A DNA stretch of 39,804 nt from Octopus bimaculoides (Eukaryota): NCBI RefSeq assembly GCF_001194135.2, contig NC_068995.1:36947063-36986866 (forward strand), given 5' to 3'. A program made the position numbers and the translations under genes. Under the pieces are notes generated by a model that saw nothing but the letters and a program-made list of their open reading frames with translations, made no database searches and was not told the DNA's origin. Below are positions 1,861-25,054 of this stretch, piece after piece; within the stretch, counting starts at the first letter, position 1; the number at the start of each line of letters is the position of its first letter.

Positions 1861-1874
1861 AATACGTACACAAT

Positions 1875-1876
<2 letters not shown>

Positions 1877-1954
<78 letters not shown>

Positions 1955-3112: not shown

Positions 3113-3154
<42 letters not shown>

Positions 3155-3680: not shown

Positions 3681-3962
3681 CTGATTTATCAGCGATGAAA
3701 AATGTTAACTTCTCTCCTTTTACTTTTTGTAAATCAGGATCATCTGCAACTACGTTCCCTATGAATATACCAGCTTTGTTGTTTTCTAATACATAGAAGT
3801 AAAAACTTCGTTTTATAGTTGGTGGGTGATTTAGCGGAACAAGTATAGTGATATTTGTACTACTGGAAAGACCGGGCGCTCCATTATCTATAGCTTGTAC
3901 CACAATGTTATACTTTGTTTCAACTGGTTCTCGAACAAGATTATCAGCAACGGTTATATCAC
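3681..3962 (-). CDS. Long cadherin, exon type A, cassette 3 (282 nt, phase 1-1)
   Basis: tttttcag|GT acceptor, TCAG|gtgaga donor; GDITVADNLVREP...AIDNGAPGLSSS...VPLNHPP...VLEN...ADDPD...IADKS. Confidence 0.93.
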
Positions 3963-4184
3963 CTGAAAAACAAATATTTAGATAAATCAATAATAAATAA
4001 TAATTTATTAAAAATCACAAAAATCACAACTTTGAAGAAGGGCGTAATTGATTATACCAATTCGCACATATTTTGAAAAATTCAGGATGATTCGGGAACT
4101 AGCGAAGCTGAACATATTCAGCCTATTAAAACAAGGAAATTAATTGAAAAGCCAACTTAACTAGAAATGCAGAATAAAAATTAC

Positions 4185-4437
4185 CTTTGTCTTGGTCAAT
4201 TTTGAACTTGCCAAAACCTCCATCTTTGAGCAAATATGTAATTCGGTTATTCTGAAGACTGCAATCTGAGTCGATGGCACTAACGGAACCAACTTTTGTT
4301 CCTACTTTTGCTGTGATTGGAGTTTTAAATTTATACTGCTTTTTAAATATTGGAGCATTGTCATTTATATCCTGGATGACAATTTTAAGACTGGTTTCGG
4401 TTTTATGGCCAACACCTCCTTGGTCAATGGCAGTTAC
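4185..4437 (-). CDS. Long cadherin, exon type D, cassette 2 (253 nt, phase 0-1)
   Basis: CT-rich tract then ttcaag|GTA acceptor (AAG, less common), AAAG|gtaatt donor; VTAIDQGG...IQDINDNAPIF...AIDSDCSLQNNRITYLL...GKFKIDQDK. Confidence 0.88.
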
Positions 4438-5444
4438 CTTGAAGACAGTGAGAGAGAGGGAAAGAGAGAGAAAGACGTTGAAATCATACAATATAAAATT
4501 GGTGCACGTGTTGTGTGTATGTGTATGTGTGTTCTAGATGATAAAATGAAGATGATACTGAGAGAAGGAGAGAGAGAAATAGAGAACGAGGAAGAGAGGA
4601 ATTTCTAATGTAATAAATAAACGAACAAGAAATTGAATGAGAGATGATGAGAGAAAGAAAGAAAGAAACAAGAGGAGAGGGAGGGAGAGAGAGAAAGGGG
4701 TTGGTGTTGGTCATGTGAATGCTTGAACAGCGTTTCGGCACTGATTAAATAGAATGATAAGACAGATAAACAATTGGAAGAGAGGAAATACATTGTCAGT
4801 CTTAGCTGAATGGGGTAATTGTATTTGTAGAAGTAGAAGAGAAAACGTGAGAGGAAGAGAAATGAAAAAGAGCGAGAAAATAAAACTAAGAGAAAGGCAA
4901 CTTGACTCTGGTTATTCAAAACAATAGCGACAGCTATCAGATGTCAAAAGGTGTGTGTACAACAATCTCATAAAGTAAACAAAAGTGAATTGAGAAATAA
5001 CTCATCATGGCCAGAGGCATGTATCTAAATAACATAGACAAATACAAGTACGTCAAATAACATACAACAAATTCTTGACTTATTGGAGTTATTTTCTCCT
5101 CTAGAGGCTGTATCATAATTACCAAGTAGCAATTATGACAAGGTCCACTTGAGAATGGTAGATAATCACAATTACGTGTTCTCCAAAGCTGACATACTAG
5201 GCCAGGCTTACTGTTTGGAGATATGAGAACAACAGTTGACACGTATTTCTGGCTCTATTGCCGTTATCAGCTCTACGATTGTCCGATCTTATCTCCAGTA
5301 GCCATCGGACTCGGATTTATGCAAAAAAGAGGAGAAAACATTTATGACCTTGGAAATTTTGACAAGGAAATTCTTTAGTAAAATTTCTCACGATAAATAA
5401 TGAAGATAACAAAACCAAATCCAATCAAAGTAATGTACTCCTAC

Positions 5445-5618
5445 CTTCAAGTCATATGTGTCTACAACATCACAGCGAATGTTAACCGGATGTTTCACAC
5501 GAATTGTACCTTCTAGAACGTTAAAGGTGAACAGCTGAGCACCTCCTCCTGATAAGTTGTAGACAATATCCCTGTTATATTCCTCAGCATCTGCATCGGT
5601 TGCAATAATTTCCTGATT
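5445..5618 (-). CDS. Long cadherin, exon type C, cassette 2 (174 nt, phase 0-0); no corresponding ORF in the supplied track
   Basis: tattttcag|AAT acceptor, AAG|gtagga donor; NQEIIATDADAEEYNRDIVYNLSGGGAQLFTFNVLEGTIRVKHPVNIRCDVVDTYDLK; same length as exon 17807-17980. Confidence 0.9.
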
Positions 5619-5809
5619 CTGAAAATATAAAAATTAAATTGATGACATAAAAATATGCGCAGCTTTCTAAAAACTTACTTTTAGATCTATGGGAGTTTCA
5701 TTTTTGATTTTAAGAGGTTGATGTTTAGTACCAAATTTTAAGAATTAAGCTGGTAAGAAATAAATTCTTTACTGATTGGGACGTTATCTGCCTAGCATAG
5801 GTAACCATG

Positions 5810-6125
5810 TGGAAGCGCAATGGCCCAGTGGTTAGGGCAGCGGACTCGCGGTCGGAGGATCGTGGTTTCGATTCCCAGAGTGTTTATTGAGCGAAAAACA
5901 CCTAAAGCTCCACAACACTCCGGCAGGAGGTGGTGGTGACCCCTGTTGTACTCTTTCTCCCCAACTTTCTCTAACTCTTTCTTCCTGTTTCTTGAGTAAC
6001 GTTGCGATGGACTGGCGTCCCGTCCAGTTGGGGGGGGGGACACCTACGCCATAGAAACCGGGAAACCGGGCCCATGAGTCTGGCTAGGCTTTAGAAGGGC
6101 GCATAAAAATAAAAAATAAAAATAA
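5810..6125 (+). mobile_element. tRNA-derived SINE with V-domain-like body
   Basis: A box TGGCCCAGTGG, B box GGTTTCGATTCC; GCGATGGACTGGCGTCCCGTCCAG at about 6004-6027; (AAAAAT)n tail. Confidence 0.7.
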
Positions 6126-7444
6126 GTAACCATATTAAACGATATGATTGTATTTCTACCAGTGGCTAATTCAACTGAGACAGGTCTACGATTTGCTATT
6201 TGCTGAAACACGTGATGGTTTGAACAAAAGATCTATGAGCCACCAAAGCCACTTCTACATTGTCGTTCAATCTGCTATATACTTACACAAACCATATCAT
6301 AAAATCAATGAAAAGAAAGACATATTAGATAATGTTGTCCTAGACGTACTGTATATAGTATATCTGAAAGATGGGTTAGTTACAGTAGGAACACCTTTCA
6401 TCTGTTTGATAAGGACAGTCCCGGAGTTAACAACAAACACAATAAGAAAAACCTAAACAGCAACAAAAGATATATAATGCAACGGTTCACAGTGATATCT
6501 ACTCATGGCATTAAGTAGATAAAAGATAAAATGTCTTTATTTAGGATACTAATTTATTACAGATAAAACTCTATTTTTCTAAATAATGCAGGATTAAAGA
6601 AATGAAAAAAGATCTATGAACTTGAATTACAATACCCCTGCCAGTCATTTCCTTTCTGTATACACAGCAGCTATCTTTAATATAAATAATGCGTTGTGAT
6701 GTAGCATTCCTTAGTGGTATATCTATTATTTGTTACTGCGTAATATTCGGTTTTTAGAAAAATATTTTGATACTTGAATGGAAAGCAGATATACCTGTCT
6801 GTGCATATCTGCGAAAGCATCAAATGATCTTCCCACAAACCAAAAGACCAATACAGCCAGAGTATTCAAATATCGGCTTTTGCAGTATTGAGCTGTTAGC
6901 AAGGAAATTTGATTTCAGCCTTTAGGCACAACTCGTTTATCGCAGATGTTTTATTACACGCAGTTCTTTAACTTGACAACATCGAGAGAAGATACATTAA
7001 TCACTTTGTAGATAAGATCATTATTATCTTTAGTTTAGAATTAAAAGTTTTTGGTCCAAATTCCCTCGAGTACTATATGCATATTTGGAATGTCTATGTA
7101 ATACTAGATCAAATCGATAGAAATTTAGTTCTAGATGTAAATATCAAAATATGCTTCACCTCTAAAGATTGTGTTAATAGACCGGGAATTGTAATATTTT
7201 GTGTTGCCGAGAACTCTTCTTTTTCAGACTGGAGCGAACACGTTACAATGAAGTAGAGAAATTTGAAAAGACAACACGAAACCGGTTATTTCTCAAAATA
7301 CAATGTTTATATACCAAAAAGATTTTCTAACATTTTTCTAACATTTTTCTGACATAATTTAAATATATACTTTAACCATGTAACACAAGCCTTCTGTAGT
7401 TTTTTCACTCTTATTATCTTTTATATATATATATATATATACAA

Positions 7445-7800
7445 ATGTATCTTTTATCTTTTACTTGTGTCAGTCAATAAACTGTGGCCATGCTGGGGTA
7501 CCGCCTTGAGATTTAGTCCACTGAATCGATTCCAGTGCATTTTTAAAGTCTAGTACTTATTCTATTAGCTTCATTTGCTAAACCGCTAATTTATGGGGAC
7601 GTAAACAGACCAACATCAGTTGTGAATCCGTGGTGGTGATGAGAAAAACACAGACACAATGACGCACACATACACACACACGGCTTTGGTGACCCGAGGT
7701 TATAGTAGAAGACACTTGGCCAAGGTTCCGTACAAGGGAACTGAACCTGGAACCAAGTGGTTGGGAAGCAAGCTTCTTACCACACAGCCATCCTTGCTTA
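7445..7800 (-). mobile_element. Major tRNA/CORE-like SINE with internal (CA/TG)n
   Basis: Reverse complement of the full-length copy at 25055-25474. Confidence 0.8.
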
Positions 7801-8479
7801 TATATNNNNNNNNNNNNNNNNNNNNNNNNNNNNNNNNNNNNNNNNNNNNNNNNNNNNNNNNNNNNNNNNNNNNNNNNNNNNNNNNNNNNNNNNNNNNNNN
7901 NNNNNNNNNNNNNNNNNNNNNNNNNNNNNNNNNNNNNNNNNNNNNNNNNNNNNNNNNNNNNNNNNNNNNNNNNNNNNNNNNNNNNNNNNNNNNNNNNNNN
8001 NNNNNNNNNNNNNNNNNNNNNNNNNNNNNNNNNNNNNNNNNNNNNNNNNNNNNNNNNNNNNNNNNNNNNNNNNNNNNNNNNNNNNNNNNNNNNNNNNNNN
8101 NNNNNNAGAACTATATAGTTGTTTGAGTTCTTCACAGCAGAAGAGGCAAATTTCTCTCAGCGAACATAATGTTGTTTATTACTAGAATGAACATTAAAAT
8201 GACGATGATGAAGGTTAATTATATGAACTGCACTTTCACCGGCTGTCAAACGATGGTGGGGAACAGACACTGACTCAATGATGCACGCCCGCCCGCCCGC
8301 ACACATACGACGGGCTTCCTTCAGTTGTTTCGTATACCAAATCCAAGACTTTGATCGGTCCAAAGCTGAAGACACTTGCCCAAGGTGCTATACAGTGTCA
8401 ATAAATCCATGTTGGGAATTAAGCCTCTTGTCACACAGCCACATCTGCGCCTATACTGGATAAAATTGTTGCATGTATT

Positions 8480-8660
8480 TTGTTCTTGTCTCTGAACGAA
8501 GGCAAGTGCTGCTCATAACCGTCATTGAAGGTATTTTCTGTCATTTCAATGTAAAGTTTTATAGTTCCGTTCAAGCCCGAGATGCTGGCCTTGTACACCA
8601 GTTGTTCTTCTTGACACACATTGTCCAGAGATTGATATCGTAGAATCTACAAATTCCAAA
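8480..8660 (-). mobile_element. Penelope-like GIY-YIG endonuclease remnant
   Basis: SGQC/..LVYKASISGLNGTIKLYIEMTENTFNDGYEQHLPSF resembles CxxxxVVYKAxxxxxxxKxYIGxTExxFKxRYxxHxxSF. Confidence 0.55.
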
Positions 8661-8995
8661 TCGTTGTAGGCTGTTCCTAATGTTATTATTCGTATTATAA
8701 TTGAAAATAATCGACCGCATGACGAAGAGGCAACTATATTTAACTTAAACTGTATTTCTATTAAAAATCTTCTGATATTTATGCGAGTGTGGGCAGTGGA
8801 TATCTATGTTTAAAAAATGTTCTAGCTATATTTGCAGCTAATGCAGTGTTAAGCACCCATTCTCCCTATTCGATTCTAGAGTCACTCTCTTTTCCTCCCT
8901 ATATATATATATATATATGCTGCTACTATGAATGTCTGTGTATGTTGCGCCTGTGTGGTGCTTGTTCACAACTGCTTAACGACCGTCGATGATTT

Positions 8996-9155
8996 GCTTA
9001 TGAAGTTTATCGGCTCGGCTAAAAGAGACCGATAGAATAAGTACTAAGTATAAAAGAAAATAAGTACTGGGGTCGATTTGTTTGATTTAACCATTAAAAG
9101 TGGTGCCCTAGCATGACCGCAGTCTAATGACTAAAGTAAATAAAAAATAAAAGAT
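8996..9155 (+). mobile_element. 3' half of the major SINE
   Basis: aaagagaccgatagaataagtact...ggggtcgattt...gcatgaccgcagtctaatgact...aaaaga. Confidence 0.7.
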
Positions 9156-9202
9156 TACAATGAATACAACTACGTATAGGACGACGTTGAAAGATAACTC
9201 AC

Positions 9203-9444
9203 CAATTTCACAACTCCAGACAAATCAGTTTCGGTATAAGTTCCGTAATATCCCACAGTTGATTTAAAGATTGGCTCATTATCGTTGATATCTTCAACTA
9301 TTACCTTCACAGTGGTACTAACTGTATGGGTCGGGGCACCGATGTTTATAACAGAAACGGTGAAAATATATTGTTCCTGTTGTTCACGGTCAAGAAGTGA
9401 TTGCGTTTGGATCAAACCAGTTTCAGAGTTCATGGTAAACATAC
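9203..9444 (-). CDS. Long cadherin, exon type B, cassette 2 (242 nt, phase 1-0)
   Basis: tcttgcag|GT acceptor, TTG|gtgagt donor; MFTMNSETGLIQTQSLLDREQQEQY...VEDINDNEPIF...SGVVKL. Confidence 0.93.
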
Positions 9445-10442
9445 CTGCAAGAATAGATAATTCAGACATATTTCATACGAGAGTTCTGAAAATATATTAT
9501 ATATTTATATGAGTAAATACTCTCAAAACAGTTGTAAGCAATTATATACACCAACATGTACAATATTATACATTTATTAGGTGATTCTTTCATCACCACT
9601 AAGGCAAGTATGTTAAAGCCTATGTTCAGTTGATGATGTCAGAATAGAACTGAAGCATTCGAGGAGTTATCTCACCATACTTATAAAAGTGAAATAATAT
9701 TAAAATAATATCACTCTTCGACCAATAATGTTTTTTCTTCAGTGCATAGTTATTCCTTTCTGCTATAGCCATGTGTTTTGTTTTGTCGTAGTACTCAACA
9801 GAGGCGAGAACATTTTAATGTCAAGGATACTTAGATATTTGAAGACTATTTTCTTCACGCATAAAACATTTTGACACGTAGGAGTGAATAAATTAATTCA
9901 AATACACAACGATAAATTTACGTCCATCTAAAATTAAAACAATGTGTCTGAAAGGATAAGCATATATATATTTGGATAGAGTTGTTAGATATGGTATTAA
10001 CAAGTTTTTATTTGATTTATATATTTATTATTATCAGTTGCTACTACTATGGCCACCATAACTACTGGAGTTTAAGGTTTGGATTGTTCTGAAGATTTAA
10101 ATTGCGTAATATTTGTAATATATTCAATAACTTGATGCTGTCTAATCAAAAGTAATGTAACAATGATATCAATGCTAAGAATAAACATTTTTGCAGCAAA
10201 ACTTCATGTAATCTTCTGAAAGTTGGATTATTCGCGCTCATGTAAAATGAAATGTTTTGTGCAGAAACACAACAGAACACTCGAAGCAGATTTGAACTCA
10301 GACCAATGAGAAAGTCATCGAACATATTATCTGCCTAGCCATTTTGCTCTCTCTCTCTCATATTTTCCCCTAGTATTTTATCAACCTTAAATTGAGTAAA
10401 AGTGAAATTTACATAAGAACACCAAATACTAAACAAATATTC

Positions 10443-10660
10443 GTTTCTACCATAGGCACAAGACTTGAAATTTTAGTGGGAGAGTTTAGCCGATTACATC
10501 GACCGCAGTACTAAACTGGTACTTATTTTATCAACATCGAAAGGATAAAAGGTAAAGTCGACCTCGGCGGAATTTGAACTCAGGAACGTAAAGACGGACG
10601 AAATGCCGCTAAACATTTTTTCGGCGCGGTAAAGGGTAATGATTCTGCCAGCTCGCTGTC
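10443..10660 (-). mobile_element. tRNA-derived SINE (gtcgacctcggcgg family)
   Basis: Near full-length copy matching the other family members. Confidence 0.8.
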
Positions 10661-10791
10661 TTATAGAAAAACAAATATTGAGTATCAACTATGGCTGCCT
10701 TTAGACAGCCATAGAGATCGTTATAGAAAATTGAGCCGACGATTGTATAGTTCTTGGTTTAATGAAAATCAATCTCCTGTGCAAGAATAAA

Positions 10792-11071
10792 CACCATATT
10801 TACTTGTGTATAAGTCACCCCCGTGTATAAGTCGTACTCGTGTATAAGTCGCCTTCCTTATTTAGTATTAAACCTTGGTACAAAACTTCCCCCTCATAGT
10901 TTTAGCTTTACTTCATCTATAAGTTACCCCCTCAGTTAAGTGTGAAGTCTGGGTACAAATTTTTTCCCTTCGTAATTTTAGCTTTGCCCCATGTATACGG
11001 CGCACCCTAGTTTTTGTCTCAGTTAAAATCAAGTATAAAATATTGCTACTTATAAACGAGTAAATATTGTA
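10792..11071. mobile_element. pogo/Tigger-like MITE
   Basis: Termini caccatatttacttgtgtataagtc ... ctacttataaacgagtaaatattgta; internal gtgtataagtc repeats. Confidence 0.6.
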
Positions 11072-11160
11072 AATTCACACAAAGAGAAACATACACACAG
11101 ATACACATAGACACACACCATACATACAACTCGCGTGCATACACATACGTAAGAGATTAC

Positions 11161-11442
11161 CTGTAATATCTGATATGACGTAGACAATTTCTTCTTGTGG
11201 ATTTTGATTCATATCAGGATCGGTCACTGTAATTTTCCCTATTTCAGTGGTGGTTGTGCTGTTTTCTTTGACAAAGAATACATAAGTGTCATTCACGATT
11301 GGTGGTTTGTTCAGCGTCACACGTATCCTCACCTTTGCGAAACCAGAAAGACTCGGTTCACCAGTGTCAAATGCTTGGATAACCAGGTTGTATTCTTCCC
11401 CTTGGGTATTGTCTGTCAGGTTGCTGGAGACATATAATTCAC
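11161..11442 (-). CDS. Long cadherin, exon type A, cassette 2 (282 nt, phase 1-1)
   Basis: ttttcag|GT acceptor, ACAG|gtaatc donor; GELYVSSNL...AFDTGEPSLS...VTLNKPP...VKEN...TDPD...ISDIT; same length and phase as the other A exons. Confidence 0.93.
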
Positions 11443-11639
11443 CTGAAAAGAGATGACAAAAATGAAAAAAGTCAATAAAAGATATTTGCAGATAATTTAG
11501 TGTCATGAGAGAAAAGAAATTATTTTATCAGTACAAAGGCAGTAATATGAGGCTGAGACAACATTGCACCATAATATAATACAAGCAAAGGTAAAATTCG
11601 AATTTCGAAGGCATTGGTGAAACTCTGTTTCAGCTATAG

Positions 11640-12071
11640 TCTTTTATCTTTTATGTTTTACTTGTTTCAGTCATTGGATTGCGACCATGCAGCCATGCTG
11701 GGGCACTGCCTTCAAGGATTTAGTCGAACAAAATAACCTCACTAGTAGTATTTTGTTTTTAGGTTTAGTATTCTATAGATGACTTTTGCCGAACTTCTAA
11801 GTTACGTGGACGTAACCAAATCCACACCGTTGTGAAGCAGTGGTGGGGTCAACACGAACATTAAGACAAACACACACATACATGCATAAACACACATATA
11901 CAACATATACGATGAGCTTTCACACAGTTACTGTTTACCAAATTTACTCACAAGGTATTGGTCATTTCGGAGCTATAGTACAAGAGACATGATCGTGGTG
12001 TCTCGCAGTGGACTGAACCCGACACCCCGTGGTTGCAAAATAGGTTTCTTAACCACGTAGCCATACCTGCA
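11640..12071 (-). mobile_element. Major SINE, full length
   Basis: Tail cttttacttgtttcagtcatt... through head ...aaccacgtagccatacctgcac. Confidence 0.8.
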
Positions 12072-12473
12072 CTATTAAGTTTTTTTTCTACGATTTTTCA
12101 CTTTACTAATTTACCATCCCAATCTGTCCCCCACCTCAACGCATATGATAATAAAAAATAGTCTTGTGTACCTAACATAATTTCTTGCATTGCTCAACAT
12201 TAGCAAACTTAAAAAACAACGTTAAAGAAAATAATTCTAGCAAAAACAGTGAGAATAAAAATAATTTTAAAATTTAAAAGCAATTTTCTCAATGGAATCC
12301 CAAATTTCTTTTGGAATTTTGAAAATTTCCTATTGAGATCGAGGTGGAGATATTTTCAAAGATTAAGAATTTCAGCTTTAAATTATATTAGTATCGAAGT
12401 ATTTTGCCGAAATACCATATCAAAATGAAGGTATGTTGTTGATTGGATAAAGTGTAACATTATTACTGATAAT

Positions 12474-12536
12474 AATAATAATAATATCCCTAGCAGTTAT
12501 TCTATAAGAATAACTGCTAGGGATGTTATTATTATT
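12474..12536. repeat. 30-bp-arm inverted repeat with 3-nt loop
   Basis: aataataataatatccctagcagttattct-ata-agaataactgctagggatgttattattatt; one mismatch (12485/12525). Confidence 0.9.
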
Positions 12537-12984
12537 TGTTTCATAAGAAAATAATCGAATTAAAAAGGAACTGAACGAAAGCATATTTAATGAATGCCAA
12601 ATCAGATTATACATTCAGTAAAAGAGTAATCAATGTTTTTTTCTAATTAGACATCAATGAGAGACCACTTCGCACATGCTTCGTCATATTAAAACTATCC
12701 AGTGAAAGAATATAATTTAGCAAAATGCATTTTTGGTGGTAGAGAGTTCGGGAACTCATGAAAAGCTATTCTAAGAAAGCACCTACATAACAACTTACAA
12801 TTGAATTGGTGAAAGTATGTTTAATGCTTTGAGGAATAAAATAAAAGCCTAAGGGCAGATATAGGGTAGGAAAAAGTACTGGTTGTTGACGAAATATTAA
12901 ATTTAACTTGGCAAAAGCAGGAGCTGAAGTTTTGGTAGTATCTGTCTATACATGAGGACGGGATTGCATTATATTTTATTGTCA

Positions 12985-13403: not shown

Positions 13404-14581
13404 AATGACCTGATTGTAAATGTCAAATATCAATGTGGTCATTTTGACTGTAAATAACCGTTAGAGATCCAATTCTTTAATGCAAGTAGGGGTCCATTTA
13501 ACAATAAACGTTATTCCTTAGTAACCTGAATCAGTCAAAATTTCAAACCTTCGACGGTACACTGCTATAGGAACAGAATCAATAACAGCAACAACAATAA
13601 ATAAGTTAACAAAAAGAAATAAGCCGTAACAACTGAAAAAAAATTATTATATTAAAGCAAAAATAAAATTAGATAGTTAAAACTTGACAATCAATTTGAT
13701 TTTAACATGAAAATTATACATTAGTTTAGTTCTAATTGTTTCTTCTTTGTCTTGTATAATTTCACCTGTAATTTTCTCTTTTACTTTCTGAGATCGTTAA
13801 ATTAATTACTCCGCTGATTTAATCAATTGCTTCCGCCCATCAATACTTTTAGTTTTGTACCAATATTAGAAATCATTATTACAGCTAATTTATCCCCGAT
13901 TTTGTATTTATGATTAAGGTTGTTTGGTCGAATTAGCGATTTGCCAGCATTGTTTTGGATTTTAACTAAATATGTCTTTCACCCTCCTAAAGTCAATGAA
14001 AATTAGCAACAATTAAATATATTCGACTCTACCATTGAAGACAATGTATATATACGGCATAAACTAACGGATAAGAGTAGCAATAAATAAATACGCATAA
14101 AAGAATATTATACCACCTCAGACAATATATAAATATAATAAAACTAAAATGATATAAATAAAACATAAAAAAATGAAATTCGTTGTTAGTGACGGAAGCA
14201 GTATTAGTTCAAATGAACGATCTGTATATCATACTTGAAGTATACATACTGTTGAAAACCTTCTAAACTGCAGTATTAGTCTCGAGAAAACATCTCTCAT
14301 ACTTGCTACTGATGAAGCTAAAAAGAAATCAGAAATCCGGACTTAACTATACTACCGCCGCTTCTGGGCAATTTTCGCCTGCGAATGATATATTTTAGTG
14401 TTTTTTATCCTATACATCTATAAAGGATGATTTCGAGACGAATATTGCAGATTAGAAGACATTCAACAGTATACATGATTTAATTATGATATACAGATAG
14501 CTAATAAAAAAATTAATCTTTTAAGAATGAAAACAAAAAAAATAAAAATAAAAATGAAACTCCGAATTAAATGGTATGAAA

Positions 14582-14804
14582 TACACAAATGGATACTGAA
14601 AAGTTCCTGGCTTTGGGTAAAAAAAAATACAGAAGGATCAGTAAATTATGATTTTGTTCAGCATATCCCCCTCGCAGATTCAAACACTTATTGCAGTGAT
14701 CCTTCAGTTTTTCTAAGCCCTGTAAAAGAACTCGGAAGGTTTGGCTTCCAACCAGGCCTTTCGCGACACCCTTAAAGACAGGAACTTTTCAGCAACTCCT
14801 CGTA
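14582..14804. mobile_element. Mariner-type MITE
   Basis: TIRs ...ctgaaaagttcctggcttt / aaagacaggaacttttcagca..., TA ends; same family as 20033-20480. Confidence 0.75.
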
Positions 14805-14817
14805 TGTCTGTTATTAC

Positions 14818-15061
14818 CTGTGATGAAATCAACTCCAAACTTGCCGGCGGATCCTTGGATCAATACGTACAAAACCCGATTGTTCCTTCTAGTAGCATCA
14901 CTATCTTGTGCTTCGACTTTACCAAATTTAGTACCAATTGAAGTAAGAGGTCCAACTTGGTAGGAATAAGTCTTTGGAAATACCGGTGGGTTATCGTTGA
15001 TGTCTTCGACGTTAACAACCAGTTTTGACTTATTTCGGTGTATTCCATCATATACTACAAT
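14818..15061 (-). CDS. Long cadherin, exon type D, cassette 1 (244 nt, phase 0-1); no corresponding ORF in the supplied track
   Basis: ttcatcttag|ATT acceptor, ACAG|gtaata donor; IVVYDGIHRNKSKLVVNVEDINDNPPVFPKTYSYQV...AQDSDATRRNNRVLYVL...GKFGVDFIT. Confidence 0.92.
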
Positions 15062-15089
15062 CTAAGATGAATTATGAAGAATAAGAAAG

Positions 15090-15120
<31 letters not shown>

Positions 15121-15135
15121 CAAAAAAAAAATCTA

Positions 15136-15202
<67 letters not shown>

Positions 15203-15270
15203 GTGTGTGCATGTATATGTGTGTGTTTTGTGTGTGTGTATGAGAAGCTAACTTCTACACCATATGGTCT

Positions 15271-15547
15271 CGTGATACACACGGACTCGGGTTTCTGGGT
15301 AGTAACCCGTCATCATCGCGTGACAATCACTGGTTAGGGATGAGAAGTGATATTTCCAATGCAAATATATATGCTTCTTCCAGTGGCAAAAAGTCGCTGA
15401 TCTCGAAAAAGGAGAAACAAGCAATAAGAAATCTCTGAGCGAGATATAAACAGTAGCAGCACGAAATATCACTTCTCATCCTTAGCCGGTGATTGTCACG
15501 CGCTGATGACAGGTTACTACCCAGAAACCGGATCCGTGTGTATCATG
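15271..15547. mobile_element. Foldback/MITE with about 85-bp inverted arms
   Basis: 15271-15355 pairs with 15464-15547 with few mismatches. Confidence 0.75.
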
Positions 15548-15754
15548 TCAGGTTAGATATGGGAATGGTGATTTCCTTTTGCAAATACTGATAGGGCACA
15601 GACGGTGTGTCATTAGCTAGCTGGAGGAGACGTCTTCCTGGGGCTATAAACTACAGTAGCATCGTCCCATATGGGTCAGCCACATTTAGGTGGCAAATAT
15701 ACTTCACGATGTCGTGCTGCTTCTGTTTATATCTCGCTCAGAGATTTATTATTG

Positions 15755-15806
<52 letters not shown>

Positions 15807-16768
15807 CAAAATAGAGTGAAAAAGCTACAGAAGACTTGTGTTATATGGTTAAAGAATATATTTAAATCGTTATGTTAGAAAAATGTTATAAAATTTTGCG
15901 TATAGTAACATTGTTTTTGGAGAAATAACCAGTTTCGTATTTTCTTTTCAAATTTCTCAAATTTCTTTACCGATATTGCGTTATCTCTTCGCTATGATGT
16001 GAAGTATGAGAGTTCCAGATAGGTGATGGTAATCAGGGATTTTTTCGGTATAAGGGAGGTAATCATAAATGTTGGGATGACTAGGTTTTATTAATTTAAC
16101 AGGATTTGGTTTAGAAAGGATAGAATGTTAGAAATGGTTAGGTTCTGCTTTATATTTTTTTCAATGAGGTAAGTTCCCTTGTTTAAAAATGCTAGAAATG
16201 GTTAAGTTTTGACTTATATTTTTCAATGAAGTAGGTTTCCTTATTTAATCTAACTTGTGTTGGTGTTCCAATGGCACATTGATAAAATGGAAAGATTACA
16301 AATTGTGGTAGCAGTTGCTTTGCTTATTTCTCAAGGTGTTCACCAAAGAGTATCATTCTGTATTCTGGGAATGCAATCTGCTGTCGGTGTAGAGGGCATC
16401 TGCGTCTAAGCGATAATCCTGTGCATTCCCATTTCTAATCAGGATCCAAGGCTCCTTAATTGGAATTTCAACAGTAACAGGGTATTTTTGTATGTATGTA
16501 TGTATGTATGTATGGATGGATGGATGGATTATGTATGTATATATGTATGTATGCATGCATACATACATACACACAGACACACACATACACACGTACAGAG
16601 GCATGCATAGTATTAATAACAGGCTATAAGATTATGATTTATATGTTTGTCATTAACTGTATGAGTGTTGTGTTCATGATCAACATGTCATGTCTAAATC
16701 TATTTAATCGCACCATAAATTCCATAAGTAAAGATAATTCTGCAAGGAGCGGGAACACTGTTTAATTC

Positions 16769-16950
16769 TTTCTAATATAAGGACAAGGCCTGAAAGGTTT
16801 TGAGGAGGGGGCTAGCCGATTACATCGATCCCAGTGCTCGAATCCGAAAAGATTAAATGTAAAGTCGATCTCAGCGGCATTTGAATCAGATCGTAAGGTC
16901 GGAACTAATGCCATTAAGTATTTTGTCCGGTATGCTAGCAATTCTGTCAG
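16769..16950 (-). mobile_element. SINE (gtcgacctcggcgg family), internally deleted
   Basis: gattacatcgatcccagtg...aaagtcgatctcagcggcatttgaatcaga. Confidence 0.65.
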
Positions 16951-17647
16951 CTCTCCGTCTTTGGGAGCACTGTTTAATTAACAAATGTTTTGTTAGTTTG
17001 CAAGGCTCTCTCTATAATTTTGAATTATGGACAAAAATTCTTCACCTCAAAGTCGAATCAGTATGAAGATGAGGTGATGTAAATTCTAACGCAAAATCAG
17101 CAACAGATTACATGAAAATACAAGAATAGAAGAAATAAAATAATGATTTCNNNNNNNNNNNNNNNNNNNNNNNNNNNNNNNNNNNNNNNNNNNNNNNNNN
17201 NNNNNNNNNNNNNNNNNNNNNNNNNNNNNNNNNNNNNNNNNNNNNNNNNNNNNNNNNNNNNNNNNNNNNNNNNNNNNNNNNNNNNNNNNNNNNNNNNNNN
17301 NNNNNNNNNNNNNNNNNNNNNNNNNNNNNNNNNNNNNNNNNNNNNNNNNNNNNNNNNNNNNNNNNNNNNNNNNNNNNNNNNNNNNNNNNNNNNNNNNNNN
17401 NNNNNNNNNNNNNNNNNNNNNNNNNNNNNNNNNNNNNNNNNNNNNNNNNNNNNNNNNNNNNNNNNNNNNNNNNNNNNNNNNNNNNNNNNNNNNNNNNNNN
17501 NNNNNNNNNNNNNNNNNNNNNNNNNNNNNNNNNNNNNNNNNNNNNNNNNNNNNNNNNNNNNNNNNNNNNNNNNNNNNNNNNNNNNNNNNNNNNNNNNNNN
17601 NNNNNNNNNNNNNNNNNNNNNNNNNNNNNNNNNNNNNNNNNNNNNNN

Positions 17648-17700
<53 letters not shown>

Positions 17701-17806
17701 CATCATCATCATCACCACCAACAGTATAAGTAGCGGCAGAAACAATAATAACAACATCAATACAAATAGAAGCATCACTAGCAACAAGAACAATATTATA
17801 ATTTAC

Positions 17807-17980
17807 CTCTAATATGTATTTGTCTTCAGTCTCGGCATCAAACTGTGAAGTCTTTTTAACTTTGATGATGCCTGTCTTTGGATGAATCTTAAACAACGAA
17901 GCATTGGATCTCTTCAGAAAATAACGAACTTTTCTGTTTATAGGGTTCTTGTCTTTATCTTCAACTGAAAGGCTGGGACT
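17807..17980 (-). CDS. Long cadherin, exon type C, cassette 1 (174 nt, phase 0-0)
   Basis: tttgatatcag|AGT acceptor, GAG|gtaaat donor; SPSLSVEDKDKNPINRKVRYFL...FKIHPKTGIIKV...FDAETEDKYILE (DxD, FxIxxxTGxI, DxE). Confidence 0.9.
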
Positions 17981-18027
17981 CTGATATCAAAAGAAAAATC
18001 TCACAACAACAAGAACAACAATAATAA

Positions 18028-18440
18028 TGGTTTCAAATTTTGGCATAAGGTTAGCAACTTCGAGTGAGTGGTACTAGTCGATCACATCGATCCCAGTGCT
18101 CAACTGCTACTTATTTTATCGATTCTGAAAGGATGAAAGCAAAATCGACCTCGGCGGAATTCGGACTCAGAACATAAAGACGGGAAAAATGCTGCTAAGC
18201 ATTTTGCTCGGCGTGCTAACGATTCCTATTTCTTTATTGCCCACAAGGGGCTAAACATAGAGGGGACAAACAAGGACAGACAAAGGGATTAAGTCGATTA
18301 CTTTGACCCCATTGCGTAACTGGTACTTAATTTATCGACCCCGAAAGGATGAAAGGCAAAGTCAACCACGGCGGAATTTAAACTCAGAACATAATGTCGG
18401 GCTAAATGTCGCTATGTATTAGGCAAAAAGCCAAAATTTT
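18028..18440 (-). mobile_element. Two tandem SINEs with the same head family and different tails
   Basis: 18028-18225 has the ...gccaaaatttgaaacc tail; 18226-18440 has the ...ccttgtgggcaataaagaa tail. Confidence 0.8.
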
Positions 18441-18601
18441 AGCAGAAGGGCTTTCCTGCAAAGCTTTACGTGTAGAGCCCACTTTCTCCAAGGCCACTTT
18501 TGCAGCGAACGTCCCAGGTCTAAGACAGTCACATCTGATGACTGTAGGTTTATCAGACATATGCACATTTTACAGTTATGCACTTAGTTTATTCATATGA
18601 T

Positions 18602-18936
18602 GAAGGCGCATGGCTCAGTGGTTAGAGCGTCGGGCTCACAATCATGAGGTAGCGAGTTCGATTCCCAGACTGGGTTATGTGTTGTGTTCTTGAAGAAGAA
18701 GCTTTCTTTCCTGTTTCTCCATTTCATTCAGCTGTAGAAATGAATTGCAACGTCACTGGTGCCAAGCAGTATCGGCGTTTGCTTTTCCCTTGGATAATAT
18801 CGGTGGCGTGGAGAAGGGAAGCTGATATGCATGGACGACTGCTAGTCTTTCATAAACAACCTTGCTCAGACTTGTGCTTCGGAGGGGGAAATTTCTAGGT
18901 GCAATTCCATGGTCAGTCATGACCGAAGGGGGTCTA
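18602..18936 (+). mobile_element. tRNA-derived SINE, distinct family
   Basis: A box TGGCTCAGTGG, B box AGTTCGATTCC, followed by a non-tRNA body. Confidence 0.65.
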
Positions 18937-18968
18937 TCCCCTTTATTCATATGATCGATACACACGCA

Positions 18969-19019
<51 letters not shown>

Positions 19020-19066
19020 TGCCTGACANNNNNNNNNNCGCACACAGACATACTGCCTGACACACT

Positions 19067-19112
<46 letters not shown>

Positions 19113-19135
19113 TACACACGCAGTGAAGTACATAC

Positions 19136-19383
19136 CAAAGATAAGATTACGGGGCCAATATTCGTCTGGTTTTCAACAACTGACGCCTTATACACCTTAG
19201 AGGACAGTATTGGTGGATTGTCATTGACATCTTCAACAACCACTGTAACTGTTGCTGTTGCTGTTGTTGGAGCTGGATCATTGTCAAAAACCTCTACTCC
19301 AAACTGGTACGTTGACATTGACTCCGTGTCCAATTCTGCTGTCGTTACGATGATACCACTCTTATTATTTATTTGGAAAGGCA
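19136..19383 (-). CDS. Long cadherin, exon type B, cassette 1 (248 nt, phase 1-0)
   Basis: ctttcag|TG acceptor, TTG|gtatgt donor; PFQINNKSGIIVTTAELDTE...VEDVNDNPPIL...VVENQTNIGPVILSL with canonical LDxE and DxNDN; in frame with exon 22286-22567. Confidence 0.93.
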
Positions 19384-19534
19384 CTGAAAGAAAATTTAAG
19401 AACTGAAAGAAATCATCATCGGAGAATTTAGATGAAAAAAAACTTGTCTTACACCAGGCAAAATAATCAAGTTTAGAATATATGACTTGGTTTAAAGGTG
19501 AACCTACTCACTACACAGACGACGTCTTAGCTTA

Positions 19535-19914
19535 GTGGCACTCCGTCGCTTACGACGTCGAAGGTTCCAGTTGATCCGATCAACAGAACAACCTGCTCGT
19601 GAAATTAACGTGCAAGTGGCTGAGCACTCCACAGACACGCGTACCCTTAACGTAGTTCTCGGGGATATTCAGCGTGACACAGTGTGACAAGGCTGACCCT
19701 TTGAATTACAGGCACAACAGAAACAGGAAGTAAGAGTGAGAGAAAGTTGTGGTGAACGAGTACAGCAGGGTTCGCCACCATCCCCTGCCGGAGCCTCGTG
19801 GAGCTTTAGGGTGTTTTCGCTCAATAAACACTCACAACGCCCGGTCTGGGAATCGAAACCGCGATCCTATGACCACGAGTCCGCTGCCCTAACCACTGGG
19901 CCATTACGCCTCCA
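19535..19914 (-). mobile_element. tRNA-derived SINE with Nin-like conserved body
   Basis: Head shared with 5810-5992; body ...gtggagtgctcagccacttgcacgttaatttcacgagcagg...atcaactggaacc...gacggagtgcc; the domain name is from memory. Confidence 0.7.
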
Positions 19915-20032
19915 CGATGTCTTAGCAATCAATAGATTACACACAGTATGACGCCGTGAAACAATAGGCTTCACACTGCAGAGCTGACTGTCGCAATAAC
20001 AACAATTATATGGCGAGTCAACGTATATGGTA

Positions 20033-20480
20033 TATAGGGGGTGCTGAAAAGTTCTTCGCTTTGGGTAAAAGAAAATACAAGAGGATCAGTGAATTATGAT
20101 TTTATTCAACATGTTCCTCTCTTAGATTCACACACTTACAGCAGCGGTCATTCAGTTTTTGTAAGCCTTGTGAAAGAACTAGGAAGGTCGGGCGTCCAAC
20201 CAGACCTTTTGCGATACCCTTAAAGCCGAGAACTTTTCAGCACTTTCTCATGTATATATAGACGAGGAGGTGCTAAAATCTTCCTGGTTTTGGATAAAAG
20301 AAAATACAGGAGTACCAGTTAATTATGATTTTATCCAATATATTCCCATGTCAAATTCACACACTTATTGCAACGGCCCTTCAGTTTTTCAAGCCCTGTA
20401 AAAGAACTCGGAAGGTTGGGCCTCCAACCAGGCCTTTCGTGATTCCCTTAAAGCCAGGAACTTTTCAGCACCCCTTCGTA
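20033..20480. mobile_element. Two adjacent mariner-type MITEs
   Basis: 20033-20253 and 20260-20480, each with gggtgctgaaaagttc...gaacttttcagcac termini, separated by (TA)n. Confidence 0.8.
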
Positions 20481-21103
20481 TATTTTGAGTTTGTCTGATG
20501 AGAAATAGCGGTTCCCATGACCATCTTTCCACAATCTTAGGGAAGAAGAAACCATCACATCTTTTGGATTATTTTCAGGTCAGAGACTTGGTGGAAATGC
20601 TTGCCACAGAGTGCGCTCCGTTCACGGTACCCAAGCGGTTAGTCAAACTGGACAACGGATTAAGCCTTCCAATCCAGTAACAAGTCCAATCCACCCGATG
20701 AACTTTCGTATATTCTCCATCTACTTATTTTCAGTCAAAGTTAGGGTCGATTGGCAGCTATCGAATAAGACCATTGTCCAAGATCCCCTGCAACTGCGCC
20801 AATCATTATTGACCGATTTCTCTCTGTCTTTCTTTTTCTCTTTGCAATACAGTGTCCACTTACACTTGAGTTCGGGTCAGTTGAGTGTTTATATGATGGC
20901 AAAGTCAAACACGGCGATGTTTGAACTCAAAACGTAAAGAGTCAGAAGAAATGCTTCTAAATATTTTGTCAGGCGCGGTAACGATGTTGTCTGATCGTCA
21001 GCGATATAGTCTATTATAATGATAACTGCTAGATCTGTTCACATATATATTCATGAATGCACCCATGACCACACTACACCGCACCAGACCAGACCAGACC
21101 ATA

Positions 21104-21155
<52 letters not shown>

Positions 21156-21437
21156 NNNNNNNNNNNNNNNNNNNNNNNNNNNNNNNNNNNNNNNNNNNNN
21201 NNNNNNNNNNNNNNNNNNNNNNNNNNNNNNNNNNNNNNNNNNNNNNNNNNNNNNNNNNNNNNNNNNNNNNNNNNNNNNNNNNNNNNNNNNNNNNNNNNNN
21301 NNNNNNNNNNNNNNNNNNNNNNNNNNNNNNNNNNNNNNNNNNNNNNNNNNNNNNNNNNNNNNNNNNNNNNNNNNNNNNNNNNNNNNNNNNNNNNNNNNNN
21401 NNNNNNNNNNNNNNNNNNNNNNNNNNNNNNNNNNNNT

Positions 21438-21505
<68 letters not shown>

Positions 21506-21509
21506 TCCT

Positions 21510-21553
<44 letters not shown>

Positions 21554-22285
21554 TCGTTTATTCTTCCATATATATGAACAGGATATCATTTAATCTGTAT
21601 AACAACGGACCACGGTCTGGTATTCATAATGATTTTTTTACTTTTATTCTTATCTATAGTCTAAAATGCTTTATCTTCTCTTTTTCCTAGCCACCAGACT
21701 GTGTTTATGCAATAAAACCAGCAATACTGTTATAGAAGTAAATTCATTCAATTACAGAATAACATTCTTTTTACAACAATTGGTTATTTGCCATTTGTAA
21801 ATTGCAGTGTAGGAGCCAGAGTTAGATAAACATAACAGATTGGAGAATTATTACTCTTGCTGTGGCCATATATTCTTATAATCTGAGCTATATTATCTAT
21901 TATCTTAAGATTTAAAGTTTGAAACAGCCGACCGCTATTCTAAGATAAAGAATTTACTGATCCGAATTTATGAGATGGGTTAATGACGACGCAGAAGCAT
22001 TTTTGTTAGTTCAATCTTAACACTTTAAAGATGGTAAGAGTGTTTTTTGCGAAACATTTTTGGCTGCTCTGTTGAGTAAATCGAGTGACTGTGTCGAAGA
22101 AGTTACTTTGTTGTTTAAACTTCATGTTGGTTCTTAGTAAGAATTTACAATTACGTTTTTGAACCCTCTGATATAAGAATGGATTCTATTTATGTCCTGA
22201 TAAATGAAGAAGCATTTATCTCAAGTTTATGTCAATGGTATATATTCAACAGTGTTATGAATCTTAATGGAAAAATTACACTCAC

Positions 22286-22567
22286 CATCTTTGTCAATGA
22301 GGATGTACCATAACGTCTGGTTACTTCCTAACGCTCCGTCCGGATCTGTTGCATTTACTGAGCCAACTTTGGTTCCAATTTTAACACCTTCTGAGACATG
22401 AAAAATGTTGTTGGGTGCAATTGTGACTGGTTTATTTATTGGCACCTCAATCTTTACAATTGTGCTCGATGATAAAGAGGGGTAGCCAAAATCTATTGCT
22501 CTGATATTCAACTCATACAAACGTTTCTGTGGTTCTCTGGTCAAATCATCGGCAACTTTTATCTCAC
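22286..22567 (-). CDS. Long cadherin, internal exon type A, cassette 1 (282 nt, phase 1-1)
   Basis: ttttcag|GT acceptor and G|gtgagt donor; encodes GEIKVADDLTREPQKRLYELNIRAIDFGYPSLSSSTIVKIEVPINKP...ATDPDG...IDKD (end of one EC domain, start of the next). Confidence 0.93.

Positions 22568-25020: not shown

Positions 25021-25054
<34 letters not shown>

What the first reader, a model, noticed from the sequence alone, without database searches (positions are those of the whole stretch)
3681..22567. Every third EC-EC linker lacks the calcium-binding motif: a periodic stiff-stiff-hinge filament
Seen: linkers inside B exons (VEDVNDNPP, VEDINDNEP) and D exons (VEDINDNPP, IQDINDNAP) are canonical. The linker inside every A exon is EVPINKP / RVTLNKPP / LVPLNHPP, with both aspartates gone. 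The preceding domain also lacks its A-strand Glu (YQVGPLTSIG, KFKTPITAKVG) and the Asp of LDRE (LTRE, LTDN, LVRE). Known: these residues bind the linker Ca2+ ions, and Ca-free or Ca-poor linkers create bends or flexible joints in DN-cadherin, Dachsous and PCDH15. Inference: a regularly repeated hinge every three domains could let a very long ectodomain zig-zag, coil or act as a spring.
Basis: partly seen in the sequence, partly recalled or inferred. Interest (0 to 1): 0.75.

Follow-up and report, generated by a model that had tools for sequence, protein, structure and literature searches.

The report
Periodic calcium-poor joints in giant cadherin
Nine exons of an uncharacterised mollusc giant cadherin-repeat gene are built from a repeated three-domain cassette whose third junction has lost most calcium-binding residues, a pattern kept since before snails and cephalopods diverged.

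Summary
On the minus strand, nine cadherin exons with canonical splice sites join into one open 726-codon frame. All four assembly gaps lie in introns. A transcript-derived homologue aligns over 721 columns with no gap, so no exon is missing. The exons form a frame-neutral four-exon cassette encoding three EC domains. Both linker types inside B and D exons are canonical DxNDNxP. The linker in every A exon is a shorter, proline-rich VPxN(K/H)PP, and the domain before it lacks the XEX Glu and the DRE Asp. Gastropod homologues repeat this pattern five to eight times: 0 of 24 A-type junctions keep the Glu, against 75 of 76 canonical ones. Some cassettes are orthologous between cephalopod and gastropods, so the pattern is ancient and selected, not chance. 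The domain after each A linker mostly keeps its site-3 ligands, as in PCDH15 EC5-6, so the joint is probably calcium-poor (0-1 ion), not necessarily calcium-free. Homologues have a signal peptide but no transmembrane segment, so this is probably a secreted filament, not an ectodomain. AlphaFold models the joint as ordered with non-canonical geometry. Hinge or fixed kink remains untested.

The parts
22286..22567 (-). Exon A1 (282 nt, phase 1-1). It encodes the end of a type-3 EC, the non-canonical linker EVPINKP (22448-22428) and the start of a type-1 EC (HVSEG, TDPDGA).
   Evidence: Splice sites and frame. Pfam Cadherin. Motif coordinates.
19136..19383 (-). Exon B1 (248 nt, phase 1-0). It carries the canonical linker VEDVNDNPP (19237-19211).
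17807..17980 (-). Exon C1 (174 nt, phase 0-0). It encodes the middle of a type-2 EC (EDKDKN, FDAE).
14818..15061 (-). Exon D1 (244 nt, phase 0-1). It carries the canonical linker VEDINDNPP (15010-14984), then a type-3 EC start that lacks the XEX Glu (YQVGPLTSIG, 14962-14933).
11161..11442 (-). Exon A2 (282 nt, phase 1-1). It carries LTDN in place of LDRE, the non-canonical linker RVTLNKPP (11323-11300), and a type-1 EC start with VKEN and TDPDMN.
9203..9444 (-). Exon B2 (242 nt, phase 1-0). It carries LDRE and the canonical linker VEDINDNEP (9298-9272).
5445..5618 (-). Exon C2 (174 nt, phase 0-0). It encodes the middle of a type-2 EC (ATDADAEEYN).
4185..4437 (-). Exon D2 (253 nt, phase 0-1). 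It carries the canonical linker IQDINDNAP (4377-4351), then a type-3 EC start that lacks the XEX Glu (KFKTPITAKVG, 4332-4300).
3681..3962 (-). Exon A3 (282 nt, phase 1-1). It carries LVRE in place of LDRE, the non-canonical linker LVPLNHPP (3843-3820), and a type-1 EC start with VLEN and DDPDLQ.
7806..8106 (.). Assembly gap inside the B2-C2 intron (9202-5619). The other gaps lie in the A1-B1, B1-C1 and C1-D1 introns. None touches an exon.
   Evidence: Gap-free 721-column alignment to P0001.

Best explanation
The window holds two and a half copies of a tandemly repeated four-exon, three-EC cassette. The cassette runs B-C-D-A, is 948-951 nt long and is frame-neutral (phase 1 to phase 1). It belongs to an uncharacterised mollusc giant cadherin-repeat gene that automatic pipelines name 'protocadherin Fat 4-like'.

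In each cassette two EC-EC junctions are canonical three-calcium linkers. In the third junction, every calcium ligand supplied by the upstream EC and by the linker has been replaced. The XEX Glu is replaced mostly by Pro, the DRE Asp mostly by Thr, Val or Leu, and DxNDNxP becomes a VPxN(K/H)PP linker two residues shorter.

Calcium sites 1 and 2 therefore cannot form. Site 3, built mainly by the downstream EC, may survive in many cassettes. The periodicity arose because a cassette that already carried this junction was duplicated. At least some of those duplications predate the cephalopod-gastropod split, and selection has since kept the junction in this state.

Inferred mechanism: the protein is a chain of calcium-stiffened three-EC rods, about 13-14 nm each, joined by short apolar, proline-rich joints. 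These joints are largely calcium-independent and have a non-canonical inter-domain geometry. That gives the filament regular kinks.

Homologues carry a signal peptide, have no transmembrane segment and end in a short Cys-containing tail. The filament is therefore probably secreted rather than membrane-anchored.

Shown: the exon structure, the motif pattern, its periodicity and its conservation. Inferred: calcium stoichiometry, joint geometry and rigidity, secretion, and biological role.
For: - Exon model and open frame.
- Exons A are 282 nt three times and exons C are 174 nt twice, with identical phases.
- The same intron positions occur in Gigantopelta.
- There are three EC types, and the A linker is 2 residues shorter.
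- Family statistics: XEX Glu 0/24 before A linkers (Pro 15, Ile 4, Ser 3) against 75/76 before canonical linkers. Downstream DxD is kept in 24/28 and 21/26 against 76/76 and 75/76. The XDX Asp is kept in 17/28 against 70/73.
- In the A-junction alignment the linker Asn and Val are invariant.
- The period recurs 5-8 times in the cephalopod transcript, Gigantopelta, Lottia, Haliotis and Patella.
- Cassette tree: window cassette 2 groups with Patella c4 and Gigantopelta c1. The terminal cassette of the cephalopod transcript groups with Gigantopelta c2 and Patella c5.
- AlphaFold2 on the A junction: pLDDT 87, pTM 0.70, linker blocks 92-93.
- Foldseek TMq to solved two-EC structures is 0.64 at most, typically 0.50-0.56 at 6-8 A. 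The canonical control pair scores up to 0.84, typically 0.65-0.80 at 2.3-4.8 A.
- Signal peptide and no hydrophobic segment; four independent C-termini end just after the last EC with a Cys.
- PCDH15 EC5-6 has the same motif configuration and binds one Ca2+ at site 3: PMC7547225.
Against: - No calcium-binding or structural measurement exists for this protein.
The geometry was judged only indirectly from TM-scores.
- PCDH15 EC5-6, the closest motif analogue, is flexible in crystals. That favours a hinge over a fixed kink.
- Secretion is inferred from homologues. The window contains neither end of the gene, and Lottia and Haliotis asinina models end abnormally.
- The one transcript contig available (L001) has a frame-breaking B-to-A exon junction. 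The true cassette number in cephalopods is therefore unknown.
Confidence: 0.6

Rival explanations
1. One reading: the A junction is a truly flexible hinge, calcium-free or holding one Ca2+. The filament behaves as an entropic or unbending spring, or as a freely jointed chain with 3-EC segments.
For: - The motif configuration is the same as PCDH15 EC5-6, which adopts three different orientations in crystals and contributes soft elasticity in simulations (PMC7547225).
- Ca-free and partial Ca-free linkers are bendable in DN-cadherin by high-speed AFM (PMC8325961).
- Site-3 ligands are relaxed compared with canonical junctions.
Against: - AlphaFold2 gives the junction high local confidence, and a higher pTM (0.70) than the canonical control (0.62).
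- The linker is shortened by two residues and is rich in Pro.
- The lost acidic ligands are replaced by Pro, Ile, Thr and Val. DN-cadherin EC2-3 and PCDH15 EC9-10 show similar apolar replacements and form fixed apolar interfaces (PMC5120219).
Confidence: 0.3
2. A neutral relic. One EC-EC junction decayed in an ancestral cassette and was merely copied by duplication. The periodicity has no functional meaning.
For: - The periodicity is fully explained by cassette duplication.
- Other giant cadherins show period-4, period-5 and period-6 patterns of imperfect linkers that likewise follow internal repeats.
Against: - The junction is not degenerate. The consensus VPxN(K/H)PP has an invariant Asn and Val, and Pro occupies the XEX position in 15/24 cases.
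- It is kept in cassettes only 30-45% identical overall and across cephalopod-gastropod divergence.
- No A junction has reverted, and no B or D junction has decayed beyond single substitutions.
Confidence: 0.06
3. The A junction is primarily a binding or assembly surface, for example cis or trans dimerisation, or docking of a partner at a 3-EC register. It is not primarily a mechanical element.
For: - Ca-free linker regions coincide with adhesion determinants in DE- and DN-cadherin (PMC8325961).
- PCDH15 flexing points are needed for cis-dimer geometry (PMC7547225).
- The conserved terminal Cys hints at covalent assembly.
Against: Nothing here tests it. No partner is known, and no co-variation or interface prediction was run.
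Confidence: 0.1
4. An artefact: mis-assembly around the gaps, or a pseudogene, creates an apparent repeat.
For: - Four N gaps lie within the span.
- The related transcript contig has two frame breaks.
Against: - All gaps are intronic.
- The frame is open across nine exons with canonical splice sites.
- The alignment to an independent transcript-derived protein has no gap.
- The same structure occurs in five gastropod genomes.
Confidence: 0.02

Closest known systems
PCDH15 EC5-6 partial Ca2+-free linker (Choudhary et al. 2020, PMC7547225)
   Same: - The upstream EC has a modified XEX motif and lacks DRE.
- The linker DxNDN is replaced by a Pro-containing sequence that keeps an Asn (PPNNQ there, VPxNxPP here).
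- The downstream DxD and XDX site-3 ligands are largely retained.
   Different: - The PCDH15 linker is a single site in an 11-EC membrane protein. Here it recurs every third junction in a cassette array of a TM-less protein.
- The linker here is two residues shorter and has its own conserved consensus.
- Calcium occupancy and flexibility were measured there and not here.
Complete Ca2+-free linkers: DN-cadherin EC2-3 (3UBH) and PCDH15 EC9-10 (4XHZ, 5KJ4)
   Same: Acidic ligands are lost and replaced by apolar residues. The linkers are conserved across species and have non-linear geometry.
   Different: - In those linkers the downstream DxD and XDX are also lost. Here they are mostly kept.
- The AlphaFold2 model of the A junction does not superpose on them: TMq 0.44-0.45 at about 14 A for the EC9-10 entries (5kj4), 0.50 for 4xhz (PCDH15 EC8-10) and 0.48 for 3ubh.
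Fat4 and Dachsous giant cadherins (the automatic name of the homologues is 'protocadherin Fat 4-like')
   Same: They have many tandem ECs, and some junctions lack calcium motifs, which allows self-bending (Tsukasaki 2014, as cited in PMC8325961).
   Different: - No EGF, laminin-G, transmembrane or cytoplasmic region is found in any family homologue.
- Non-canonical junctions in 117 Fat4, CDH23 and Dachsous-like hits are not period-3.
- Sequence identity is only the generic 27-31% seen between any ECs.
Nematostella vectensis 'protocadherin Fat 4 isoform X5' (XP_048581442, P0161)
   Same: It has twelve consecutive 3-EC cassettes (303 aa) with two canonical linkers followed by a non-canonical one (VIDVTPKPRN), giving the same C-C-x period.
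   Different: - Its cassettes are almost identical, so the duplication is recent.
- The protein has a long non-EC C-terminal tail, which I did not analyse further; no hydropathy scan was run on P0161.
- The downstream EC has also lost DxD.
- In-register homology with the mollusc cassette was not demonstrable.

Membership tests
Cadherin superfamily (EC repeats) | Tandem extracellular cadherin domains recognised by PF00028 | tested here: met
   All nine exon ORFs hit PF00028 (E 4.5e-13 to 5e-4; six of nine above the 28.8-bit cut-off on their own). An HMM built from the family segments the spliced protein into 8 ECs.
Cadherin superfamily (EC repeats) | Canonical Ca2+ motifs (XEX, DRE, DxNDNxP, DxD, XDX) at inter-EC junctions | tested here: met
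   Present at all four B and D junctions in the window, and at about 95% of B and D junctions in homologues.
Complete Ca2+-free linker (DN-cadherin EC2-3 or PCDH15 EC9-10 type) | Loss of XEX, DRE and DxNDN in the upstream EC and linker | tested here: met
   Met at 3 of 3 A junctions in the window. Across the family the XEX Glu is kept in 0 of 24.
Complete Ca2+-free linker (DN-cadherin EC2-3 or PCDH15 EC9-10 type) | Loss of DxD and XDX in the downstream EC (PMC5120219) | tested here: not met
   DPD is retained three times in the window. In the family, DxD is kept in 24/28 and 21/26 cases and the XDX Asp in 17/28.
Partial Ca2+-free linker (PCDH15 EC5-6 type) | Site 1 and 2 ligands lost while site-3 ligands of the downstream EC are retained (PMC7547225) | tested here: met
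   Same motif configuration.
Partial Ca2+-free linker (PCDH15 EC5-6 type) | One bound Ca2+ at site 3, and variable inter-EC orientation | not testable with these tools
   This needs crystallography, ITC or SAXS. AlphaFold2 gives only an ion-free single model.
Fat / Fat4 atypical cadherins | EGF and laminin-G domains, a transmembrane helix and a cytoplasmic tail after the EC array | tested here: not met
   Tested on homologues only. Pfam finds only Cadherin domains. There is no hydrophobic segment, and the proteins end just after the last EC. The window itself lacks the gene's 3' end.
Tip-link cadherins (CDH23, PCDH15) | Membrane-adjacent domain and transmembrane helix, plus orthology by sequence | tested here: not met
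   No TM segment. Identity to CDH23 and PCDH15 is the generic 22-28%.
GPI-anchored cadherin (T-cadherin type) | Hydrophobic C-terminal GPI signal | tested here: not met
   The C-termini ..QGRKVGCCRVPC..SESPCK..NNINNSC and ..TPSNSTC are short and polar.

The most novel reading that the evidence does not exclude
The family is a secreted extracellular fibre built only from cadherin repeats. It has no membrane anchor and is tethered or polymerised through its terminal cysteine. Regularly spaced calcium-insensitive joints, one per three ECs, give it a defined zig-zag or helical super-structure that works as an elastic element. On this reading the same C-C-x design arose independently in a cnidarian membrane cadherin, which would point to a general design rule for long cadherin filaments.
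Probability: 0.2. Interest if true: 0.8.

Novelty: new variant of a known kind. Interest (0 to 1): 0.55.

Why it matters
Calcium-free and calcium-poor linkers are known as isolated sites that bend or soften long cadherins such as PCDH15, DN-cadherin, Fat, Dachsous, CELSR and LI-cadherin. How their number and spacing shape a filament is hard to study, because natural examples are irregular. This family offers a natural periodic array: two stiff junctions followed by one altered junction, repeated five to eight times. It has been conserved across deep mollusc divergence, and its cassette boundaries coincide with frame-neutral exon sets. That makes it a convenient model for measuring how linker chemistry sets persistence length, kink angle and calcium sensitivity. 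It also suggests a cadherin-repeat protein that is secreted rather than membrane-bound, whose biological role is completely unknown.

Tried and rejected
- **Missing exons in the assembly gaps.** Rejected. The alignment to P0001 has no gap and the exon phases are consistent.
- **Further exons in 1-3600 or 22650-39804.** None found with window exons, three homologues or the full transcript as queries. The intron 5' of A1 is therefore longer than 17 kb, or the upstream exons lie outside the window.
- **Period-3 as a general cadherin property.** Rejected. 0 of 117 other hits show it. A few of 145 giant representatives matched my loose pattern filter for x-C-C-x-C-C-x; I did not inspect those individually.
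- **L-shaped (PCDH15 EC9-10) or V-shaped (DN-cadherin) geometry.** The AlphaFold2 model does not match: TMq 0.44-0.48.
- **Membership of Fat4 or CELSR, as the automatic names suggest.** Rejected on domain content.
- **Deep homology between the mollusc cassette and the Nematostella 3-EC cassette.** Inconclusive. All window EC types score best against the most canonical Nematostella EC.
- **Taxon of the window from the intronic ORF at 23490-24155.** Failed. Its relatives are unnamed proteins scattered over insects, spiders and a sea slug, with no Pfam hit.
- **Literature on this family.** Nothing was found for the Lottia identifiers, for a periodic Ca-free linker, or for a secreted mollusc cadherin. 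Jin et al. 2012 (PMC3271863) is not held.
- **Inter-domain angle.** It could not be measured, because model coordinates are not exposed.

Full report
**What is in the window**

The window is AT-rich, microsatellite-rich animal DNA with eight N gaps. Every cadherin-like ORF lies on the minus strand, and all nine hit Pfam Cadherin PF00028. Each has a canonical AG acceptor behind a polypyrimidine tract and a GT donor.

The exons are A1 22567-22286, B1 19383-19136, C1 17980-17807, D1 15061-14818, A2 11442-11161, B2 9444-9203, C2 5618-5445, D2 4437-4185 and A3 3962-3681. They sum to 2181 nt and give one stop-free frame of 726 codons.

The three A exons are all 282 nt (phase 1-1) and the two C exons are both 174 nt (phase 0-0). 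B exons run from phase 1 to 0 and D exons from phase 0 to 1. A B-C-D-A set is 948 or 951 nt and runs from phase 1 to phase 1. The cassette is therefore frame-neutral and can be duplicated through its introns.

**The gap question**

The four N runs flagged by the scan's program all fall inside introns: A1-B1, B1-C1, C1-D1 and B2-C2. P0001 is a protein encoded on a 7.4-kb Logan contig from run SRR27666075. It aligns to the spliced window protein over 721 columns at 61.4% identity without a single gap, including across each junction that flanks a gap. tblastn with three homologues and with the whole contig's translations finds no other cadherin exon in the window. The letters on both sides of each gap are therefore in the same gene and in frame, and no exon is hidden in a gap.

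**The observation**

An EC-domain HMM built from this family cuts the protein into eight ECs of three recurring types.

- The junctions encoded inside B and D exons are VEDVNDNPP, VEDINDNEP, VEDINDNPP and IQDINDNAP. Their upstream XEX Glu and DRE-type motifs are intact.
- The junctions inside A exons are EVPINKP, RVTLNKPP and LVPLNHPP. They are two residues shorter than the canonical linker.
- The EC before each A junction has Pro or Ile instead of the XEX Glu (where that position lies in the window, A2 and A3), and LTRE, LTDN or LVRE instead of LDRE.

Within the window alone the x-C-C-x-C-C-x arrangement has p = 0.028 by permutation.

**The rest of the gene, through homologues**

The window does not contain either end of the gene. 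Contig L001 encodes, in order:

- a signal peptide (MWKIALLAITLCLSSTGNC);
- about eight N-terminal ECs with mostly canonical linkers;
- an array in which A-type junctions (TTVNQQP, VPVNKP, VALNKAP, VPVNHPP and a variant ..YNDHAP) alternate with pairs of canonical junctions;
- a stop 17 residues after the last EC strand.

An exhaustive HMMER search of 1.84 billion cluster representatives, followed by linker scoring and cluster look-up, found these family members:

- Lottia gigantea LOTGIDRAFT_229554: 3166 aa, 7-8 periods;
- Haliotis asinina XP_067676185: 2936 aa, 6 periods;
- Patella vulgata XP_055954782: 1890 aa, 6 periods;
- two Haliotis rubra models;
- Gigantopelta aegis 'protocadherin Fat 4-like'.

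The Gigantopelta locus has the same intron positions. Two more A exons (VPINKPP, VPMNYPP) sit in the adjoining upstream gene model.

Pooled over 29 A-type and 78 canonical junctions:

| Ligand | At or after A-type junctions | At or after canonical junctions |
|---|---|---|
| Upstream XEX Glu | 0/24 (Pro 15, Ile 4, Ser 3) | 75/76 |
| Downstream DxD, first Asp | 24/28 | 76/76 |
| Downstream DxD, second Asp | 21/26 | 75/76 |
| Downstream XDX Asp | 17/28 | 70/73 |

Permutation p is 9e-5 for Lottia and 6e-4 for Patella. None of 117 Fat4, CDH23, Dachsous-like and other hits from the first search shows the pattern. The period does apply only to the cassette array, not to the N-terminal ECs.

**Origin of the periodicity**

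Cassettes within one species are only 30-45% identical. In a neighbour-joining tree, window cassette 2 groups with Patella cassette 4 and Gigantopelta cassette 1. The terminal cassette of the cephalopod transcript groups with Gigantopelta 2 and Patella 5. Haliotis asinina cassettes 2-5 form a lineage-specific cluster.

The cassette, with its altered third junction, was therefore already duplicated before cephalopods and gastropods diverged, and it has been re-amplified since. The altered junction is not degenerate. In an alignment of ten A junctions the linker Val and Asn are invariant and the motif VPxN(K/H)PP is clear. This argues for purifying selection on a specific junction state rather than decay.

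**How many calcium ions?**

The downstream EC keeps its DxD motif (DPD at all three window junctions). Family retention figures are in the table above.

For PCDH15 EC5-6, Choudhary et al. describe exactly this configuration: modified XEX, no DRE, PPNNQ in place of DxNDN, and DxD and XDX retained. They observe one Ca2+ at site 3 and variable inter-domain orientation (PMC7547225). In the fully Ca-free PCDH15 EC9-10, by contrast, DxD and XDX are also lost (PMC5120219).

By established motif logic, sites 1 and 2 are abolished here and site 3 may persist in many cassettes. 'Ca-free' is not established.

**Geometry**

AlphaFold2 on the type3-type1 pair (window residues 261-467, with a 10-sequence family alignment) gives mean pLDDT 87, pTM 0.70 and pLDDT 92-93 over the linker. 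A control pair across the canonical B linker gives pLDDT 87.5 and pTM 0.62.

Against the PDB:

- The control superposes on solved canonical two-EC fragments with TMq up to 0.84, typically 0.65-0.80, at 2.3-4.8 A.
- The A-junction model reaches only 0.64, against CDH23 EC12-13. Its typical values are 0.50-0.56 at 6-8 A.
- The A-junction model scores 0.44-0.45 at about 14 A against the PCDH15 EC9-10 entries (5kj4). It scores 0.50 against 4xhz (PCDH15 EC8-10) and 0.48 against DN-cadherin EC1-4.

The prediction is therefore an ordered junction whose geometry differs from the straight canonical arrangement, but is not the known L or V shape. The models are ion-free and rest on shallow alignments. 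This is a lead, not a measurement.

**What kind of protein**

Pfam finds only cadherin domains in the N- and C-terminal parts of the homologue. No family protein has a hydrophobic segment other than a signal peptide. Four independent C-termini (the cephalopod transcript, Gigantopelta, Patella and Haliotis rubra) end 6-17 residues after the last EC with a cysteine at or one residue from the end.

This does not fit Fat4, CELSR, tip-link cadherins or GPI-anchored T-cadherin. It suggests a secreted filament, possibly disulfide-tethered. I found no paper on the family in the held library.

**Verdict**

The best-supported reading is a cassette-derived, selectively maintained, calcium-poor joint at every third EC-EC junction of a probably secreted giant cadherin-repeat protein. 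Whether the joint is a fixed kink or a flexible hinge is open.

This is a new variant of a known kind. Ca-free and partial Ca-free linkers are known as individual sites. A strict C-C-x array is not described in what I could search.

Noticed in passing
L001 nt 3549-3560 (Logan SRR27666075 contig): In the related transcript contig, the exon equivalent to A1 is joined directly to a B-type exon, with the expected C and D exons absent. This shifts the frame (..KVNLGR*). In the window, A1 is preceded by more than 17 kb without any cadherin exon. The cause could be exon skipping, a repeat-induced assembly collapse, or a real difference in gene structure.
   Followed up: partly
Homologues P0001/L001, P0002, P0136, P0164 (C-termini): The family has a signal peptide but no transmembrane or GPI-like segment. 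Its members end a few residues after the last EC with a Cys at or one residue from the end (..CCRVPC, ..SPCK, ..NNSC, ..NSTC). A secreted giant cadherin-repeat protein would be unusual.
   Followed up: partly
P0161 = Nematostella vectensis XP_048581442: This protein has twelve nearly identical 303-aa three-EC cassettes with two canonical linkers and then a non-canonical one (VIDVTPKPRN). Annotated isoforms differ in length by multiples of 303 aa. It is an independent or very distant case of the same C-C-x period.
   Followed up: partly
P0202, P0218, P0253 (Bulinus truncatus), P0263 (Mactra antiquata), P0257 (Protopterus annectens): Other giant cadherins show imperfect linkers with periods of about 4, 5 or 6 ECs (for example DVNEFSP or DENEFAP every fourth junction in P0202). 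Cassette duplication may commonly produce periodic linker chemistry.
   Followed up: no
L002 8565-9842 (Gigantopelta aegis CM027793.1): Four tandem copies, about 370 bp apart, of a partial B-type exon fragment (..GTVLDADTVIFCSLTIIV..) lie between the two NCBI gene models. This probably explains why the gene was split into a 2077-aa and a 1128-aa model.
   Followed up: no
window 23490-24418 (+), in the DNA 5' of exon A1: A 221-aa ORF is followed by an 82-aa ORF. The 221-aa ORF has 45-64% identical unnamed relatives in tephritid flies, spiders, a pseudoscorpion and a sea slug, and no Pfam domain. It is probably a mobile-element protein.
   Followed up: partly
window, last cassette of homologues (L001_C 904-1008; P0002 810-914): The final A-type junction is a different variant with an insertion and a partly canonical tail (NAPHMVYNDHAP, APDLQYNDYPP, APYFDFNDHPP). 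It is conserved between cephalopod and gastropods.
   Followed up: no
window 1700-2000, 18900-19130, 21050-21600 and elsewhere: Long (CA)n/(TG)n and (TTTC/GAAA)-type microsatellites flank several of the assembly gaps. This probably explains why the gaps exist.
   Followed up: no
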